Positions 1-7,297 of a stretch of 7,527 nucleotides of DNA are shown piece after piece. The DNA lies in IMG/VR virus record IMGVR_UViG_3300005859_000117, positions 1 to 7,527 of that record; one strand, written 5' to 3'. Positions within the stretch are counted from its first letter, which is position 1, and each line of letters starts with the position of its first letter. A model generated the notes under the pieces. The model searched no databases, had not been told where the DNA came from, and saw only the letters and a program-made list of their open reading frames with translations. The translations under genes and the position numbers were made by a program.

Positions 1-243
1 ATTTAATGAAAAATATAGTTTTTAATTTGTTGATTCAATAGGTTATGGTTCTGATGTTGATATTAATTTCTATTATAATAAGGAATTAAATATTGGAATA
101 AATGCTTTGTTTAAAGATGGAGATATTATTGTATTTTCAATATTGTATTTTTGTTGTTGGTTTTAATGATGGAAACTTTAAGAGAAATAGATAAATTTGT
201 CAAAAGAGAAAAAGAATTAGGAGGAGGAAAAAATGTTTCTTGA
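1..243 (+). pseudogene. Possible frameshifted or degraded 3' part of an upstream gene
   Basis: Frame 2 reads FNEKYSF*(TAA 23-25)FVDSIGYGSDVDINFYYNKELNIGINALFKDGDIIVFSILYF. One extra T in the T5 run at 148-152 joins it to frame 1, LLLVLMMETLREIDKFVKREKELGGGKNVS* (TGA 241-243), which overlaps the SD and ATG of the next gene as coupled genes do. Inference only. Confidence 0.3.
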
Positions 244-544
244 TGATAATGATGATATACTTGGAGATATAATAATTAGAAAGTATAAAGATAATTTTGA
301 AATTGTATTTACGAAAAGTTACAAATGTTTTATTTCAGATTTTCAAGAAAAATATTGTATTGTTGAGCATATAGATAAAGATAAAGATTTTGATGTTTAT
401 TTGATTCCTTATGAAGAGCTTAATGTCAAAAATATAGATGAATTATTTCTATTATTAATCAAGGAGCCTAGAAAAATTATAAAAATATTAACTGAAAATG
501 ATATACCGATTTATAGGCTTATTATAGAGTACTACAAAAATTAA
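233..544 (+). CDS. Hypothetical small acidic viral protein (103 aa)
   Basis: ATG preceded by strong SD GGAGGAGG (220-227) and followed by a T-rich tract. About 22 D/E versus 15 K/R. No family recognised. Confidence 0.8.
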   Translation: MFLDDNDDILGDIIIRKYKDNFEIVFTKSYKCFISDFQEKYCIVEHIDKDKDFDVYLIPYEELNVKNIDELFLLLIKEPRKIIKILTENDIPIYRLIIEYYKN

Positions 545-562
545 TTCCTTTTATATTTTTTT
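545..562 (+). terminator. Oligo-T archaeal terminator
   Basis: TTCCTTTTATATTTTTTT directly after the stop codon. Confidence 0.55.
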
Positions 563-583
563 AGGTTTAGAGATTTAGAATGA

Positions 584-595
584 TTTATATTTGTC
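584..595 (+). promoter_or_regulatory. TATA box + GTC (rudivirus-type promoter)
   Basis: TTTATATTTGTC, identical to the SSB promoter 12-mer (minus strand, 4549-4560). SD-like GAAGGT precedes ATG 629. Confidence 0.7.
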
Positions 596-628
596 ATAAA
601 AGATATGTCAATTTGAAGGTAGTCAAAA

Positions 629-1111
629 ATGAGTGAAAATAAAGATCAGATTAAAAAAATAAATGAGATAATTGAAAAATTAGAAAATTTGAAGCAAGAG
701 ATAGCCGAGTTGCAACAACAAATGGAAGCTCAAAAATATGAAAGTGATGTAAAGAATTTGTTTAAAATGATAAAAAAGATAACAAATGAGGAATTTAATT
801 CTGTATTTTATGTTGAAGGTGACAAAGTAAAGTATATAGCTAATCATGAAAGAATATCTGGATTTCCTAATTTAATTGTCTATTGTGATAAATCATCTTG
901 TAAAATGTATTGTTATCGATTTTATACAGTTGAAAATCATTTAATTAAAGTTAAATATTATGCAGAATATGATGTTCCAGATGATATAATTAGTATTTTG
1001 AAAAAATTGCCAGAAACTCCGAAAATTGATGAGTGTGCCACAGATTCAATTTTTAAATTGTATTGTTTACTAAAACAAGGTTATTCAATAAGTTTCATTA
1101 AGGAAAATTGA
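629..1111 (+). CDS. Hypothetical protein (160 aa) with N-terminal coiled coil
   Basis: Own promoter and terminator. Heptad pattern in IKKINEIIEKLENLKQEIAELQQQM. Five Cys in the C-terminal half. No family recognised. Confidence 0.85.
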   Translation: MSENKDQIKKINEIIEKLENLKQEIAELQQQMEAQKYESDVKNLFKMIKKITNEEFNSVFYVEGDKVKYIANHERISGFPNLIVYCDKSSCKMYCYRFYTVENHLIKVKYYAEYDVPDDIISILKKLPETPKIDECATDSIFKLYCLLKQGYSISFIKEN

Positions 1112-1159
1112 TTTTTTCTTCTGTTTTTGTTCTCTATTTTTCTCATAAAAAAATAGAGA
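1112..1159 (+). terminator. Oligo-T terminator followed by an 11-bp perfect inverted repeat
   Basis: T tracts from 1112, then TCTCTATTTTT (1131-1141), a 7-nt loop and AAAAATAGAGA (1149-1159). Confidence 0.55.
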
Positions 1160-1178
1160 TTTAGAGAGATAGAAGTTG

Positions 1179-1223
1179 AGAGAAAGATTTAAAAATGAGT
1201 TTAGACATAGATTATTTCGGTGA
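1179..1223 (+). promoter_or_regulatory. Strong BRE-TATA promoter plus SD
   Basis: Purine-rich BRE (AGAGAAAGA), TTTAAAAA (1188-1195) and archaeal SD GGTGA (1219-1223) 7 nt before ATG 1231. Confidence 0.7.
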
Positions 1224-1230
1224 TAGGAGA

Positions 1231-1617
1231 ATGAGTAAAGAAGATAAGTTAAATCAATTTCTAGATTTGACTCAATTAAATATTGAGGAAAGGCGTGAAC
1301 TAATCATGAAGGCGATAAAGGAAGGGAAGGAGGAAGCAAAATACATACTAATGCTCACAGAATATGATAGACCAGGACCGAGCTTTACAGATAGAGCAAC
1401 AATCAAGATATTGTACGGAGAAGTAGAAAGAGTTCTAATGAACAGAGTTTATAGCTATCCTACGACGGACGAATATTTATACGCGTTGATTCCGAAAACT
1501 AGAACTGTTGTTTTGTTGTACAAATCTGCAAGTGATTATGAAGGAGAACTAGAGAAACATGAAAAGCTATTTGTGTTTAGTTATCCTGAAGGTTGGAAGT
1601 CAATCTCTTTATATTAA
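1231..1617 (+). CDS. Hypothetical viral protein (128 aa), probable early gene; start revised from 1195
   Basis: ATG 1195 overlaps the TATA box, whereas ATG 1231 has a GGTGA SD. The motifs EYDRPGPSFTDRA and YSYPTTDEYLYALIPKT resemble, from memory, ~130-aa terminal-region proteins of rudiviruses (unverified). Confidence 0.85.
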   Translation: MSKEDKLNQFLDLTQLNIEERRELIMKAIKEGKEEAKYILMLTEYDRPGPSFTDRATIKILYGEVERVLMNRVYSYPTTDEYLYALIPKTRTVVLLYKSASDYEGELEKHEKLFVFSYPEGWKSISLY

Positions 1618-1773
1618 TTTAATTCTTTTTTTATTTTGCTCTAATTTCTTAGCTTTCTAGTTTTTCTATTTTTAATTTTTTAGCTTCATGTCTAGTTTTT
1701 TTCATAGCTAAAATGTAATTTTATTTGAAAGTTGAGAAAAATTAGATATAAAAAAATGGGTTAGATTTGAATT
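1618..1773. terminator. Convergent terminator region
   Basis: Several T5-T7 tracts on the + strand (1626-1702). A7 at 1750-1756 is a T7 on the - strand just downstream of the stop at 1774. Confidence 0.6.
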
Positions 1774-2133
1774 TCAGAGATAAACACTTAGCAGATATTG
1801 TCTATTATTAGTTGCAAATATATCAATTTCGCTTGCGTTCTTTTCAACTGTAATTTCTATATCTTTCATTAGTGTTTGTTTTCCGAATTGCAGAACTATC
1901 TTTAATGTGTATTTATTGTCTTGAATTACAAAAGCTATATTGAATGCAAAAACTTTCTTGTGAATTATTGTAAATCCTTTAATTGATAGTAGTCCGCGGT
2001 TTAAAGCTATGATTGGAGGCATTTCTTCTAGTTCAAAAGTAGATGTTAAGAGTTCGGAGATTTGTTGCTTTGTTATCTTTTGAACTACTTGTCTAACGTT
2101 TTCCTTCCAATCTTCTATTTTCTTAGGTTCCAT
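1774..2133 (-). CDS. Hypothetical protein (119 aa from ATG 2133; 122 aa if GTG 2142 is used)
   Basis: Long ORF directly downstream of the Cas4-like gene. TATA-like TTTTAATA lies about 35 nt upstream, with an SD-like GTGAG before the ATG. C-terminal half looks beta-rich. No family recognised. Confidence 0.8.
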   Translation of the reverse strand: MEPKKIEDWKENVRQVVQKITKQQISELLTSTFELEEMPPIIALNRGLLSIKGFTIIHKKVFAFNIAFVIQDNKYTLKIVLQFGKQTLMKDIEITVEKNASEIDIFATNNRQYLLSVYL

Positions 2134-2179
2134 TTTTCTCACACTTATATTTTAGAGATTTAGATATTAAAAGTTTTCT

Positions 2180-5075: not shown

Positions 5076-5420
5076 ATGAATTATGAAAAGCTTCTAGAGT
5101 TGCATCTCTCTTCTGCTTATACATATTTTGTCACAATTGCAACAAATTATAGATTTTATTCAACTATTCCGATTTATAAAAAATTTCGACAATATATCTA
5201 TAATTTTGATAGGTCTGCTCATGTGTTCTCTGTAAAGGAGCTTACGCAAGTCAGTCGTGGACTGCATTATCATCTTCTAGTTTTTACTAACAAGAAACTG
5301 GATTATTCTAAAGTTCATAAAAAAATGCCTTCACATAGTGATATTCGAATTGAGTTAGTTCCAAAAACAAAAACTGATATAAAAAAAGTTATGGAATATA
5401 TGTTAAAACAAAATTCATGA
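5076..5420 (+). CDS. rep: HUH-superfamily Rep endonuclease (SIRV1 ORF119 / SIRV2 gp16-like)
   Basis: Motif I FVTI, motif II GLHYHLLV and motif III YMLK with a single Tyr. 114 aa, no helicase domain. Confidence 0.93.
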   Translation: MNYEKLLELHLSSAYTYFVTIATNYRFYSTIPIYKKFRQYIYNFDRSAHVFSVKELTQVSRGLHYHLLVFTNKKLDYSKVHKKMPSHSDIRIELVPKTKTDIKKVMEYMLKQNS

Positions 5421-5597
5421 TTTTTTTCCTAAATGATATCCACCATGAATTAATAATGTTGAAAGCAGAATGTACAATATATTCATATAATTTTGACATT
5501 TGAATAATTCTGGATTTACAACTGCTAAGAATAGAAAAACTGCAAATAGTACACTATGAACTAGAAAAGCTATAATTGTTAGAGTTTGGTCGCTCAT
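5415..5597 (-). CDS. Small two-TM membrane protein (60 aa)
   Basis: Two hydrophobic helices (LTIIAFLVHSVLFAVFLFLAVV; ILYILLSTLLIHGGYHLG) and a basic C-terminus. Fills the gap between its neighbours exactly. Confidence 0.75.
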   Translation of the reverse strand: MSDQTLTIIAFLVHSVLFAVFLFLAVVNPELFKCQNYMNILYILLSTLLIHGGYHLGKKS

Positions 5598-5634
5598 GCT
5601 AAGTTTATTAAAGTCAAAGTGATAAAAAAATATT
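5598..5634. promoter_or_regulatory. Interleaved divergent promoters in a 37-bp gap
   Basis: Plus TTTATTAAAGTC (5604-5615), 19 nt from ATG 5635. Minus TATA-like TTTTTATC (5628-5621), about 23 nt from ATG 5597. Confidence 0.6.
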
Positions 5635-6327
5635 ATGCAGAAGCAAACATTAGAAAAATTGAGAGAAAATTCTAAATTTCTAATTGAAAATTTTGAAGAG
5701 AGTGAATTAACGAAATTGAGTAAGCTTGAGCAAGAACTAGGTTACGGTGTAATTTGGCAAAATTTTGATTCAAATACCGGATGTCTGAATTGGGTAATTT
5801 ATAATAATTCGGGAATTGATAGAGAATTTGTACTTGTGAGAGGGACTCCAGAAGTTCAGCCTTACGCATTCTTGAATTTCTATACAGAGGTATACAAAGC
5901 TTTTGGAATTATCAAATTCATAACTAATAAAGACAAATATTATAATTATCCTTATAGAGTCGGTTTAGTTCAAGATGTTGATGGGAATCTAAATTATGCC
6001 GGCGTTTTTTATGTCCCGGCGTTTAAGAAGCTTGTCTTAGAGGAATGCGGTTTCTCAGCTCCGAACAATTTGCCGAATTATTATAGAGTATTTCCGGCGT
6101 TTGCAAGAAGTACTCATGAATATTTTGTTGAATATAACCCGCTCGAGATTGCACTTTATACTATGGAGACTGGAATTCTGGTATTAAATGCTCCATTTCC
6201 AATTTATCTACAACAAGTTGAGAAATATATAGTTGATAACACTGTACCTTTTGCAAATTCTAGAGAATTTACAGAAGCAACTTGGTTAAAAAAATGGATA
6301 TATAAATACTTGGGGATTTTAAAATGA
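5635..6327 (+). CDS. Hypothetical aromatic-rich, beta-rich protein (230 aa)
   Basis: Long ORF with TATA+GTC promoter and ATGA overlap with the next gene. Resembles, from memory only, the SSV6 C213-like family of Sulfolobales viruses. Confidence 0.85.
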   Translation: MQKQTLEKLRENSKFLIENFEESELTKLSKLEQELGYGVIWQNFDSNTGCLNWVIYNNSGIDREFVLVRGTPEVQPYAFLNFYTEVYKAFGIIKFITNKDKYYNYPYRVGLVQDVDGNLNYAGVFYVPAFKKLVLEECGFSAPNNLPNYYRVFPAFARSTHEYFVEYNPLEIALYTMETGILVLNAPFPIYLQQVEKYIVDNTVPFANSREFTEATWLKKWIYKYLGILK

Positions 6328-6890
6328 TAAGTAGATATTTGTTTTTTAAGACACTGCTAGTTGTTATTTTTTCAATTACTTACGCGTTTGTTGAAGTAAA
6401 AACGCCGTTTTATCTTTACATTAATCCCTATATTTATCGCGTAATTTATTTCATTTTCTTTTTTGTAATTTCATTAGTTCCAAGTGTAACGTTAACATTT
6501 TCACTTTTTCTCTACAGTATGACGCTTGAGGACGTTTTCTATTGGATTCTTGATAATGAGTTACCGTTCAATTACGCTTGGTATTACCCCGTTTATTATC
6601 ATATTCCGATTGATGATGCCATAGAAGTTACAGTTGCAACTATCTTGTTGAAGCTCGGAAGTTCTAATTTCAAAACTCCAGAGTTTCATAATTCAGAATC
6701 TTGCAGAATGTGGTATTATTTTGTTCATGGGAAAACTCATGATTTATACGGCTTGCTTGCTCTAGTTCTGTTAAATATTATTTTATACTTTGCAACTAAT
6801 ATTTCTTTAGTTAAGTTTATTGCAATTGCAGATATTGTAATATCTACGGGAATATTTGTAGATTTGTGGAGTCACTGTTTTCATCATTAG
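6324..6890 (+). CDS. Multi-pass membrane protein (188 aa, about 5-6 TM)
   Basis: Hydrophobic segments, an EDVFYW motif and His clusters (HGKTHD, WSHCFHH). Translationally coupled to the upstream gene. Confidence 0.85.
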   Translation: MISRYLFFKTLLVVIFSITYAFVEVKTPFYLYINPYIYRVIYFIFFFVISLVPSVTLTFSLFLYSMTLEDVFYWILDNELPFNYAWYYPVYYHIPIDDAIEVTVATILLKLGSSNFKTPEFHNSESCRMWYYFVHGKTHDLYGLLALVLLNIILYFATNISLVKFIAIADIVISTGIFVDLWSHCFHH

Positions 6891-6935: not shown

Positions 6936-7082
6936 ATGCAAGAAGAAAAAGTAAGTTTTGGGATAGTAATTTCAAGAGAACTAAAAACTAGACTGAAAAT
7001 GTATTGTGCTAAAAATGATAAAAAAATAAAAGATGTGATATCAGAAGCTTTAGATGAATATCTCAAAAAGAGGGGCTTCTAA
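6936..7082 (+). CDS. svtR: SvtR-like RHH transcriptional repressor (48 aa; absent from the ORF track)
   Basis: Manual translation MQEEKVSFGIVISRELKTRLKMYCAKNDKKIKDVISEALDEYLKKRGF. Shares FGI...LKTRLKxYCAKN...EAxxEYLxKR with SIRV1 SvtR (ORF56b) as I recall it. Confidence 0.9.
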   Translation: MQEEKVSFGIVISRELKTRLKMYCAKNDKKIKDVISEALDEYLKKRGF

Positions 7083-7088
7083 TCTCCG

Positions 7089-7107
7089 CTCAGTCGTTAG
7101 GACTGAG
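7089..7107. repeat. 7-bp perfect hairpin at a convergent gene junction
   Basis: CTCAGTC-GTTAG-GACTGAG. The loop contains the stop codon of the minus-strand gene. Confidence 0.6.
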
Positions 7108-7297
7108 TTTCGTAAGATACTTCTATTTTTTTAACTCCGACAAATTTTTTATGACAATTAGGGCATTCATAATTTAATGATTTTAGAAGTTCAGCATTTG
7201 AATATAGCTTGATGCTTAGTAAATCGTAAGCTCTTGCATCTAATAATGTATATCCGCAATAGCCACACTTATAAACAACACGGACTCCTTTTTTCAT
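7097..7297 (-). CDS. C4 zinc-ribbon protein (66 aa)
   Basis: YKCGYCG ... CPNCH, two CxxC pairs. TATA+GTC promoter 18 nt upstream. Confidence 0.85.
   Translation of the reverse strand: MKKGVRVVYKCGYCGYTLLDARAYDLLSIKLYSNAELLKSLNYECPNCHKKFVGVKKIEVSYETQS

What the first reader, a model, noticed from the sequence alone, without database searches (positions are those of the whole stretch)
5415..6890. Three-gene membrane cassette inserted between Rep and SvtR
Seen: a 60-aa 2-TM gene diverges across only 37 bp of interleaved promoters from a coupled pair, a 230-aa aromatic beta-rich protein and a 188-aa multi-TM protein. Rudivirus virions have no envelope, so the membrane proteins presumably act in the host membrane. 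From memory, svtR and rep are adjacent in SIRV1/2, and the 230-aa and 60-aa proteins resemble the SSV6 C213/B68-like pair found beside a fusellovirus tail-fibre gene (unverified). Inference: a module exchanged between virus families, acting in superinfection exclusion, surface or receptor modification, or egress. This is the best candidate for an undescribed system here.
Basis: partly seen in the sequence, partly recalled or inferred. Interest (0 to 1): 0.7.

Follow-up and report, generated by a model that had tools for sequence, protein, structure and literature searches.

The report
Conserved viral membrane cassette at pyramid-gene locus
Three real, conserved but uncharacterised genes of a hot-spring archaeal rod-shaped virus (two membrane proteins and a soluble protein with a new fold) sit where related viruses keep their cell-exit "pyramid" gene; what they do is unknown.

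Summary
The window is a metagenomic rudivirus contig. It carries a 60-aa two-helix membrane gene (A, 5415-5597, minus strand). This gene diverges across 37 bp from a translationally coupled pair: B (230 aa, soluble, beta-rich) and C (188 aa, polytopic), joined by an ATGA overlap.

All three genes are under purifying selection and belong to families of unknown function. No cellular relative of B or of C's last 63 residues was found; C's N-terminal domain has chromosomal relatives in archaea. Relatives occur in Rudiviridae, Lipothrixviridae, AFV1 and an unclassified virus background. B and C are neighbours in 32 of 37 informative metagenomic loci.

The claimed resemblance to fusellovirus SSV6 C213/B68 is refuted. 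The claim that Rep and SvtR are adjacent in SIRV2 is verified.

New context:
- In North American rudiviruses the Rep-SvtR gap holds the pyramid egress gene (PVAP).
- Close relatives of the window carry PVAP between A and B, flanked by a 63-nt direct repeat. The window has one repeat copy and no PVAP.
- C's last 63 residues form a hairpin with near-invariant His/Asp/Cys motifs.
- B has a confident predicted fold with no PDB match.

My best reading is a B-centred complex at the host membrane, possibly linked to egress. The function remains unproven.

The parts
5076..5420 (+). Rep (SIRV1 ORF119 / 117-like family). Left boundary of the locus; its stop overlaps the end of gene A by 6 nt (convergent).
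   Evidence: Pfam PF21578 E 2.7e-45 and PF23343; Rep HMM hit.
5415..5597 (-). Gene A: 60-aa membrane hairpin, family phrog_9152. Invariant N28-P29 in the loop between the two hydrophobic segments, and a conserved H51-G-G-Y-x-x-G-K tail.
   Evidence: Homologues: SMRV1 orf30, SIFV gp74, AFV1 ORF63. dN/dS 0.04-0.23.
5598..5634 (.). 37-bp divergent control region. TATA-like TTTATTAAA at 5604-5612 lies about 27 nt upstream of the B start. An A/T run at 5622-5631 lies about 30 nt upstream of the A start on the minus strand. Leaderless transcripts are inferred.
   Evidence: Sequence. 0-1 differences from L008 and L009 while synonymous sites differ by about 40%. No transcription start data.
5585..5647 (.). 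Single copy of the roughly 63-nt sequence that is present twice in relative L010 (2818-2880 and 3262-3324, spaced 444 nt), where the two copies flank the PVAP gene. This is the junction of a PVAP gain or loss.
5635..6327 (+). Gene B: 230-aa soluble, aromatic, beta-rich protein, family phrog_6678. Relatives include SIFV gp66, AFV1 ORF224, AFV2 gp44, SMRV1 orf32, SIRV8 ORF53 and SFV1 ORF28-205. Residues invariant in alignment A1: W53 N57 L67 R69 G70 Y77 F79 Y87 F125 E137 G139 F140 Y167 Y175.
   Evidence: AF2 pLDDT 89.2, pTM 0.87. No PDB fold match. In BFVD only SFV1 and SBRV1 proteins match.
6324..6890 (+). Gene C: 188-aa polytopic membrane protein, family phrog_26913, full-length relative AFV2 ORF202. 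Translationally coupled to B through the ATGA overlap at 6324-6327.
6324..6698 (+). N-terminal domain of C (aa 1-125), with conserved LED..YW...LPF.YAWYYPV..HIP. It also occurs as a separate 110-160-aa protein, including in archaeal chromosomes.
6699..6890 (+). C-core (aa 126-188): a two-helix hairpin. HGKTHD (aa 135-140, nt 6726-6743) precedes the first helix and DLWSHCFHH (aa 180-188, nt 6861-6887) ends the second. It is a stand-alone 60-80-aa protein in SIRV4-11, ARV2, ARV3 and SMRV1.
6936..7082 (+). SvtR-type RHH regulator. Right boundary of the locus.
   Evidence: Pfam PF21432 E 6e-16; SvtR HMM hit.

Best explanation
The three genes are a conserved membrane module found only on viral contigs. 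B is its hub: a soluble cytoplasmic protein with a fold unmatched in the PDB. B is made in fixed proportion with C through translational coupling. It most likely docks onto small membrane hairpins, namely the C-core and gene A, whose conserved polar motifs would lie on one face of the host membrane.

In the C-core, HGKTHD sits before the first helix and DLWSHCFHH sits after the second. Together they would form a His/Asp/Cys cluster, probably a metal site, on the cytoplasmic side.

In this rudivirus lineage the module was built around the gene for PVAP, the pyramid protein that opens the cell for virion release. In the window that gene is absent from the site, through recombination at a 63-nt repeat.

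I therefore think the module acts on the host membrane late in infection, in remodelling connected with release.

Shown: the genes, their conservation, their linkage, the PVAP synteny and the PVAP indel.

Inferred: a physical B-C(-A) complex, the membrane topology, metal binding, expression timing and any role in egress.
For: Linkage:
- B lies within about 1.1 kb of C in 32 of 37 informative loci.
- B precedes C with a spacing of -4 to +9 nt in 19 loci (13 sequence clusters).
- C and B are convergent neighbours, 22-346 nt apart, in 11 loci (9 clusters).
- A, C-core and B are also clustered in SMRV1.
- A and B co-occur in AFV1 and SIFV.
- The A<B>C> cassette also sits in a non-rudiviral background.

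Selection: dN/dS is 0.04-0.23.

C-core motifs: they are invariant or nearly so among close relatives. A reduced [TA]-H-[DS] ... D-x-x-A-H ... H pattern persists in most of the distant 60-80-aa relatives read.

Topology: the two motifs flank a helical hairpin, so they lie on the same membrane side. A's basic C-terminal tail fits a cytoplasmic end. B has no TM segment.

PVAP link:
- The order Rep>, <PVAP, SvtR> is found in 28 of 41 PVAP-selected loci, including SIRV4/5/9/11.
- L010 and L011 have Rep>, <A, <PVAP, B>, C>, SvtR>. L014 has Rep>, <PVAP, B>, C-core>, SvtR>.
- L010 carries a 63-nt repeat on both sides of PVAP, and the window has one copy.

PVAP-less rudiviruses SMRV1, ARV2 and ARV3 carry the C-core.
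Against: - There is no direct evidence of function, timing, interaction or metal binding.
- The PVAP link is specific to this lineage. In SIRV4-11, B and the C-core lie in the right arm, far from PVAP. In SMRV1 and SIFV the neighbours are a methyltransferase and a glycosyltransferase.
- SIRV1-3, SRV and SSRV1 have PVAP and no detected A, B or C (SIRV2 also by HMM), so the module does not look necessary for pyramid egress.
- ARV1 and MRV1 lack both PVAP and A/B/C, so the module is not a general PVAP substitute.
- The Rep-SvtR gap could simply be a recombination hot spot.
- Model coordinates could not be inspected, so clustering of the His/Asp residues is inferred from helix positions only.
Confidence: 0.35

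Rival explanations
1. The module is a membrane-bound modification machine unrelated to egress. C would be a small metal-dependent membrane enzyme, or its anchor, and B its soluble partner. The target would be lipids, lipid-linked glycans or virion proteins, for example in envelope or capsid maturation.
For: B is present in every lipothrixvirus genus sampled and in AFV1, which are the enveloped filamentous viruses, but only sporadically in naked rudiviruses. In SMRV1, SIFV and AFV1 the genes lie beside a SAM methyltransferase and/or a glycosyltransferase. The His/Asp/Cys cluster looks more like a catalytic or metal site than a structural membrane protein. C's N-terminal domain has chromosomal relatives in housekeeping contexts, which suggests an ordinary membrane activity.
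Against: No profile or fold match to any enzyme family. Most lipothrixviruses have B without C. B is not annotated as a virion protein in SIFV or SFV1, which is neutral. Proximity to the glycosyltransferase and methyltransferase may only reflect the conserved core block of these genomes.
Confidence: 0.22
2. The module provides superinfection exclusion or receptor masking. The membrane proteins would alter the host surface or pili so that further virions cannot adsorb or enter.
For: Small virus-encoded membrane proteins in variable genome regions are typical of such functions (general knowledge of phages). The genes are variable among rudiviruses and sit in a recombination-prone locus.
Against: The conserved motifs of A and C most plausibly face the cytoplasm, and B has no signal peptide or TM segment. 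The families are strongly conserved, with dN/dS 0.04-0.23, rather than fast-evolving. No match in PADLOC. Nothing in the data bears on adsorption.
Confidence: 0.1
3. The genes do not form a system. They are functionally unrelated accessory genes that have accumulated in a recombination hot spot between Rep and SvtR.
For: Every combination occurs at the locus: with or without A, with or without PVAP, and with the long or the core form of C. Short duplicated junctions mark the events. Each family also occurs without the others in some genomes: ARV2 and ARV3 have only the C-core, and SFV1 has only B.
Against: B-C adjacency survives in two different arrangements, in distant genomes and in different genomic positions. 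The tight -4 to +9 nt coupling is conserved. A, B and C travel together into a non-rudiviral background.
Confidence: 0.15
4. The module was acquired from fuselloviruses and is related to SSV6 C213/B68 beside the tail-fibre gene.
For: SSV6 does carry C213 and B68 next to the end-filament gene B1232.
Against: hhalign probability 0.3% for the B family profile against C213. BLASTP E 0.14. No alignment between gene A and B68. HMMs of A, B and C find nothing in the SSV6 genome. No fusellovirus hit in tblastn or BFVD Foldseek.
Confidence: 0.02

Closest known systems
SMRV1 orf30-orf31-orf32 (Sulfolobales Mexican rudivirus 1)
   Same: The same three families are clustered: orf30 is A (54% identity), orf31 is the C-core, and orf32 is B (28% identity, pairwise E 1e-9). 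A diverges from the other two, as in the window.
   Different: The order is C-core then B. C lacks the N-terminal domain. The cluster sits beside the methyltransferase, not between Rep and SvtR. All three are annotated only as hypothetical proteins 'similar to Lipothrixviridae proteins'.
B family in filamentous viruses: SIFV gp66, AFV1 ORF224, AFV2 gp44, SFV1 ORF28-205
   Same: Homologous to gene B. The predicted fold matches the SFV1 and SBRV1 proteins in BFVD (Foldseek E 1e-13, TM 0.70-0.78).
   Different: 23-27% identity. These are enveloped viruses. Most lack C, and only some have A. Function is unknown; the 'EF-hand' note in the records is an unverified pattern match.
AFV2 ORF202 and the stand-alone C-core proteins of SIRV4-11, ARV2 gp23 and ARV3 ORF22-65
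   Same: ORF202 aligns over the full length of C (39% identity). The small proteins match its last 63 residues at 55-62% identity and share both motifs.
   Different: In SIRV4-11 the gene is unannotated and convergent with B. In ARV2 and ARV3 it follows the Holliday junction resolvase, with no B or A. ARV3's label 'putative viral structural protein' has no basis that I could find.
PVAP (SIRV2 P98 / STIV C92), the pyramid-forming egress protein
   Same: A small viral protein that inserts in the host membrane. It occupies the same Rep-SvtR gap in relatives and lies between A and B in L010 and L011.
   Different: No sequence similarity to A, B or C. PVAP has one N-terminal TM helix plus soluble helices. 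The window has no PVAP at this site.
Class II phage holins
   Same: The C-core and A are about 60 aa long with two TM helices and probably both ends in the cytoplasm (size and topology only).
   Different: The C-core has no charged C-terminal tail. It has strictly conserved His/Asp/Cys motifs, unlike the fast-diverging holins. No lysis function is known, and no holin has been shown in archaeal viruses (my own knowledge).

Membership tests
PHROG families 9152 (A), 6678 (B) and 26913 (C), all of unknown function | Significant profile match over most of the protein | tested here: met
   E 3e-19, 6e-13 and 1e-42.
PVAP (P98/C92) pyramid protein | Sequence homology to P98 | tested here: not met
   A PVAP HMM built from SIRV2 P98 and the L011 homologue scores gene A and its relatives at E > 0.1 and reports no B or C ORF in any locus scanned. 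It does find true PVAPs at E 1e-49 to 1e-60.
PVAP (P98/C92) pyramid protein | About 90-100 aa, with one N-terminal TM helix followed by soluble helices | tested here: not met
   A and the C-core are two-TM hairpins of about 60 aa. C has about 6 helices. B has no TM segment.
PVAP (P98/C92) pyramid protein | Self-assembles into pyramids in membranes | not testable with these tools
   Needs expression and electron microscopy.
SIFV gp43-type six-fold pyramid protein | Sequence homology to SIFV gp43 | tested here: not met
   BLASTP against C gives E 2.5. Against A there is no alignment. B was not compared with gp43.
Fusellovirus SSV6 C213 / B68 pair | Sequence or profile similarity to C213 (for B) and to B68 (for A) | tested here: not met
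   hhalign probability 0.3%; BLASTP E 0.14; no alignment for B68. Family HMMs find nothing in SSV6.
Membrane di-iron 'His-box' enzymes (desaturase / hydroxylase type) | Three His boxes: HX3-4H, HX2-3HH and HX2-3HH | tested here: not met
   Only two His motifs are present (HGKTH and HCFHH). H135 and H187 are not kept in distant members. A's second His is Gln in relatives.
Membrane di-iron 'His-box' enzymes (desaturase / hydroxylase type) | Profile match to a desaturase or hydroxylase family | tested here: not met
   No such Pfam or NCBIfam hit for C, for 21 family members or for 10 distant relatives.
Class II holins | Small protein with two TM helices | tested here: met
   (C-core, A).
Class II holins | Highly charged cytoplasmic C-terminal tail | tested here: not met
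   The C-core ends in DLWSHCFHH with no Lys or Arg. A has a short basic tail.
Class II holins | Timed membrane permeabilisation | not testable with these tools
   Needs expression assays.
Known anti-phage defence or immunity proteins (PADLOC) | Profile match | tested here: not met
   No hits at E <= 0.1.

The most novel reading that the evidence does not exclude
The C-core hairpin with its His/Asp/Cys cluster, working with B, could be a new kind of virus-encoded membrane machine. It might be a minimal metal-dependent membrane enzyme or a pyramid-independent release device. Such a machine could let rudiviruses without a PVAP gene (SMRV1, ARV2, ARV3 and the window's lineage, if it truly lacks PVAP) leave the cell. 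It might also control pyramid opening where PVAP is present.
Probability: 0.12. Interest if true: 0.85.

Novelty: new variant of a known kind. Interest (0 to 1): 0.5.

Why it matters
How archaeal viruses remodel and breach the host membrane is known for only one protein type, PVAP, plus SIFV gp43. Several rudiviruses lack any recognisable exit gene (bioRxiv 10.1101/2020.01.16.907410). The trigger for pyramid opening is also unknown (PMC10791045).

This cassette supplies three conserved candidates with no known function that sit at the PVAP locus: a soluble protein with an unmatched fold, and two membrane hairpins, one of which carries a probable metal site.

It also reveals natural variants with and without PVAP in the same metagenome. 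These variants, together with the culturable Yellowstone SIRVs that carry B and the C-core, make the question testable.

If the module has nothing to do with egress, it still defines a widely shared Ligamenvirales protein set that needs a function.

Tried and rejected
1. C-core or A as the SIFV gp43-type pyramid protein. Rejected: no similarity. The original PNAS paper could not be read.

2. Fusellovirus SSV6 C213/B68 relationship. Rejected.

3. SIRV2 gp48 (ORF249, next to P98) or AFV2 ORF208 as B homologues. Rejected: E 0.6 and 1.3.

4. SFV1 ORF27-60, which is coupled to that virus's B gene, as an A or C-core homologue. Rejected: E > 0.1.

5. His-box di-iron enzyme idea. Weakened, because only two motifs are present, some of the His residues are not conserved, and there is no profile hit. 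A resemblance to YdjM-like membrane hydrolases recalled from memory found no support in Pfam scans.

6. Fold searches. The B and C models have no significant PDB match. A PDB sequence-profile search with the B-family alignment also found nothing.

7. Cellular homologues. Two genome-contig scans found none. They used only patterns from the C-core and from B, so they could not see the N-terminal domain of C. That domain does have chromosomal relatives.

8. 'C-core replaces PVAP' as a general rule. Rejected, because ARV1 and MRV1 lack both and SIRV4-11 have both.

9. Literature. No paper held mentions AFV1 ORF224. The anti-defence gene supplement holds none of the searched accessions or gene names of the SMRV1, SIFV, ARV2 and AFV1 homologues as searchable text.

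10. The sigma-70 promoter scanner was not used, because these are archaeal promoters.
Full report
**1. What is in the window**

The window is the whole of a 7527-bp metagenomic contig, IMGVR_UViG_3300005859_000117 (Ga0080003_1002824). At DNA level only its replication block matches isolates, at about 75% identity to Sulfolobus islandicus rod-shaped viruses.

Left of the finding lie:
- a Cas4-like nuclease;
- the gp18-type ATPase;
- the PHA01746-like protein that corresponds to SIRV2 gp17;
- an RHH protein;
- a 117-like Rep.

Right of the finding lies a 56B/SvtR-type RHH gene.

- The two divergent start codons are 37 bp apart.
- The 230-aa and 188-aa genes overlap as ATGA.
- The 230-aa protein has no hydrophobic segment and is 17.8% aromatic. 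The other two proteins have TM segments.

I call the genes A (60 aa), B (230 aa) and C (188 aa).

**2. They are real genes**

- Each has many homologues.
- Against four relatives, dN/dS is 0.04-0.23 for all three genes.
- The 37-bp spacer is identical in one relative and differs at one base in another, although synonymous sites in the flanking genes differ by about 40%. This fits a constrained double promoter.
- A-T-rich TATA-like boxes lie about 27 and 30 nt upstream of the two start codons, which suggests leaderless transcripts. That is read from the sequence, not measured.

**3. The three families**

None matches Pfam, NCBIfam or PADLOC. Each falls in a PHROG family of unknown function.

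*Family A* is found in SMRV1 (orf30), SIFV (gp74), SIFV2, AFV9 and AFV1 (ORF63).

*Family B* is widespread in Ligamenvirales:
- all betalipothrixviruses, AFV1, AFV2, SFV1 and SBFV1-3;
- the rudiviruses SIRV4-11, SBRV1 and SMRV1.

*Family C* has two forms:
- a full-length relative in AFV2 (ORF202, 39% identity);
- stand-alone proteins of 60-67 aa that match only its last 63 residues, in SIRV4-11 (unannotated there), ARV2, ARV3 and SMRV1.

An exhaustive profile search of 1.84 billion representative proteins found only 61 clusters. It also showed that C is a fusion of two modules that occur separately: an N-terminal domain of about 110-160 aa, and the C-core of about 60-80 aa.

The N-terminal domain has cellular relatives:
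- one lies after the triosephosphate isomerase gene in the Sulfuracidifex metallicus chromosome;
- another lies in a housekeeping context.

A third relative of this domain lies on a 46-kb viral contig that encodes a family-B DNA polymerase.

No cellular relative of the C-core or of B was found, within the limits of the pattern-based scans.

**4. Is it a module?**

I collected 80 metagenomic loci by similarity to C. Of these, 37 have at least 800 bp of flank on both sides. In 32 of the 37, B lies within about 1.1 kb of C.

Two arrangements recur:
- B directly upstream of C, with a spacing of -4 to +9 nt: 19 loci in 13 sequence clusters.
- C-core and B convergent, 22-346 nt apart: 11 loci in 9 clusters. 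This is the SIRV4-11 type.

All 16 informative loci with B upstream of the long form of C also carry A, diverging from B.

The same A<B>C> unit also occurs with no Rep or SvtR nearby, on contigs whose other genes match no isolate. Those genes include a Holliday junction resolvase and a 177-aa protein of phrog_23653.

SMRV1 clusters the three families as A<, C-core>, B> next to its methyltransferase.

So B is the hub:
- it pairs with C in rudivirus-like genomes;
- it pairs with A in AFV1 and SIFV;
- it pairs with both in the window's lineage.

Each family can also occur alone, as in ARV2 and ARV3 (C-core only) and SFV1 (B only).

**5. The locus**

In SIRV2, SvtR (ORF56b) and Rep (ORF119c) are 24 bp apart.

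The more telling comparison is with North American rudiviruses. In 28 of 41 loci fetched with a PVAP query, including SIRV4, 5, 9 and 11, the order is Rep>, <PVAP, SvtR>. There the Rep-SvtR gap is the home of the pyramid-forming egress gene.

Relatives of the window show graded versions of this locus:

| Loci | Order between Rep and SvtR |
|---|---|
| L014, L086, L099 | <PVAP, B>, C-core> |
| L010 (about 90% protein identity to the window), L011-L013 | <A, <PVAP, B>, C> |
| window, L008, L009, L043, L044 | <A, B>, C> (no PVAP) |

In L010 a 63-nt direct repeat (71% identity, spaced 444 nt) brackets PVAP. Each copy carries the promoter-like spacer and the first bases of B, with a 15-nt identical core. 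The window has a single copy. PVAP was therefore gained or lost here by recombination at this repeat, and the direction is not resolved.

In L011 a duplicated 3' end of Rep brackets gene A.

The PVAP-less form recurs in contigs from several data sets, under purifying selection, so it is not an assembly artefact. Because these contigs are only 3-9 kb long, a PVAP gene elsewhere in the genome cannot be excluded. Contigs with PVAP at this site occur in the same metagenome.

**6. Structure and motifs**

*B.* AlphaFold2 gives a confident model (pLDDT 89, pTM 0.87), mostly beta strands with five short helices. Foldseek finds no PDB match: the best E-value is 0.016 at TM 0.22. In BFVD only the SFV1 and SBRV1 homologues match. 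Fourteen residues are invariant across the family, including R69, E137-x-G139-F140 and several aromatics.

*C.* The model is all-helical (pLDDT 83, pTM 0.57) and has no PDB match. The striking feature is the C-core:
- C127, F133, G136-K137, H139-D140 and Y142-G143-L144 precede the first helix.
- V179-D180-L181-W182, H184-C185-F186 and H188 close the second helix.
- All of these are invariant in 24 sequences.
- Most of the distant stand-alone relatives read keep a reduced pattern, [TA]-H-[DS] ... D-x-x-A-H ... H.

The two motifs flank a hairpin, so they lie on the same side of the membrane. The spacing of D180, H184 and H187/188 puts them on one helix face. I read this as a probable metal site.

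I place the site on the cytoplasmic side. Outside these acidophiles the pH would protonate histidines, and B, the likely partner, has no export signal. This topology is inference.

*A.* It has an invariant N-P in its loop and a conserved H-G-G-Y-x-x-G-K basic tail. My first idea of an HX3H box in A failed, because the second His is Gln in relatives.

**7.

The fusellovirus link is refuted. SSV6 C213 and B68 exist next to the end-filament gene, but they show no similarity to B or A by BLASTP, profile-profile comparison or family HMMs.

Exchange between virus families is real, but it involves rudiviruses, lipothrixviruses, AFV1 and an unclassified background.

Of the suggested roles, only egress gains any support, and that support is circumstantial.

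**8. What it most likely does**

I commit, at about one chance in three, to the following model:
- B is tethered to the cytoplasmic face of the host membrane by C and/or A.
- The C-core supplies a metal site.
- The complex acts late in infection, in membrane remodelling tied to virion release.

Points in favour:
- the PVAP synteny and the shared divergent control region in this lineage;
- the membrane location;
- the presence of the C-core in three PVAP-less rudiviruses.

Points against:
- SIRV1-3, SRV and SSRV1 make do with PVAP and have no detected A, B or C.
- ARV1 and MRV1 have neither PVAP nor A/B/C.
- In SIRV4-11 the genes are far from PVAP.
- In SMRV1, SIFV and AFV1 the neighbours are methyltransferase and glycosyltransferase genes. 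This supports the main rival: a membrane-bound modification activity serving envelope or capsid maturation.

Superinfection exclusion, and the view that the genes merely share a hot spot, remain possible but fit the data less well.

**9. Novelty**

The genes are already in databases as hypothetical proteins. What is new here:
- the recognition of a B-centred three-family module;
- the two-domain build of C and its invariant His/Asp/Cys hairpin;
- the unmatched fold of B;
- the placement of the module at the PVAP locus, with a natural PVAP gain or loss.

I file it as a new variant of a known kind: accessory membrane genes of an archaeal-virus egress locus. If the C-core proves to be an enzyme or a release device, it would be a new kind of system.

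**10. Limits**

No expression, interaction or phenotype data exist. The key SIFV egress paper could not be read.

Noticed in passing
L010:2818-2880 and L010:3262-3324 (window equivalent 5585-5647): A 63-nt direct repeat (71% identity, 444 nt apart) brackets the PVAP gene in a close relative. The window has one copy and no PVAP. This is a natural presence/absence polymorphism of the egress gene.
   Followed up: yes
L011:2550-2598 and L011:2838-2886: The 3' end of Rep is duplicated (71% identity) on both sides of gene A in the 40.7-kb relative. This suggests that A was inserted by recombination at the end of Rep.
   Followed up: partly
L001:4492-4686 (-) in SIRV8; the same place in SIRV4-7 and SIRV11: The 64-aa C-core gene is not annotated in the GenBank/RefSeq records of the Yellowstone SIRVs. 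In SIRV8 an opposite-strand ORF55 is annotated over it.
   Followed up: partly
L176:8001-8417 (Sulfuracidifex metallicus chromosome): A 138-aa relative of the N-terminal domain of C lies 6 nt after the triosephosphate isomerase gene and before an aldose epimerase gene. The domain therefore has cellular, non-viral members. Another lies in a housekeeping context on L179.
   Followed up: partly
L105:1290-1866 and L074:3159-3521: In some metagenomic loci the N-terminal domain and the C-core are separate, overlapping or duplicated ORFs (a split or frameshifted C, or an extra copy of the N-terminal domain).
   Followed up: no
L078:2326-8455: In an AFV2-like lineage the long form of C sits among several Ser/Thr-rich proteins with N-terminal TM anchors, which are probably glycosylated surface proteins. 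No B gene is adjacent.
   Followed up: no
window 233-2142: Four ORFs of 103-160 aa at the left end (233-544, 629-1111, 1195-1617 on the plus strand; 1774-2142 on the minus strand) were not examined. They lie outside the block that matches isolates at DNA level.
   Followed up: no
window 7097-7297 (-): A 66-aa protein with two CxxC pairs (zinc-ribbon-like; only weak Pfam hits) converges on SvtR.
   Followed up: no
P0045: A 124-aa database protein joins the C-terminal part of C to a 56B/SvtR RHH domain. It is probably a read-through or a gene-calling artefact on a 652-bp contig.
   Followed up: no
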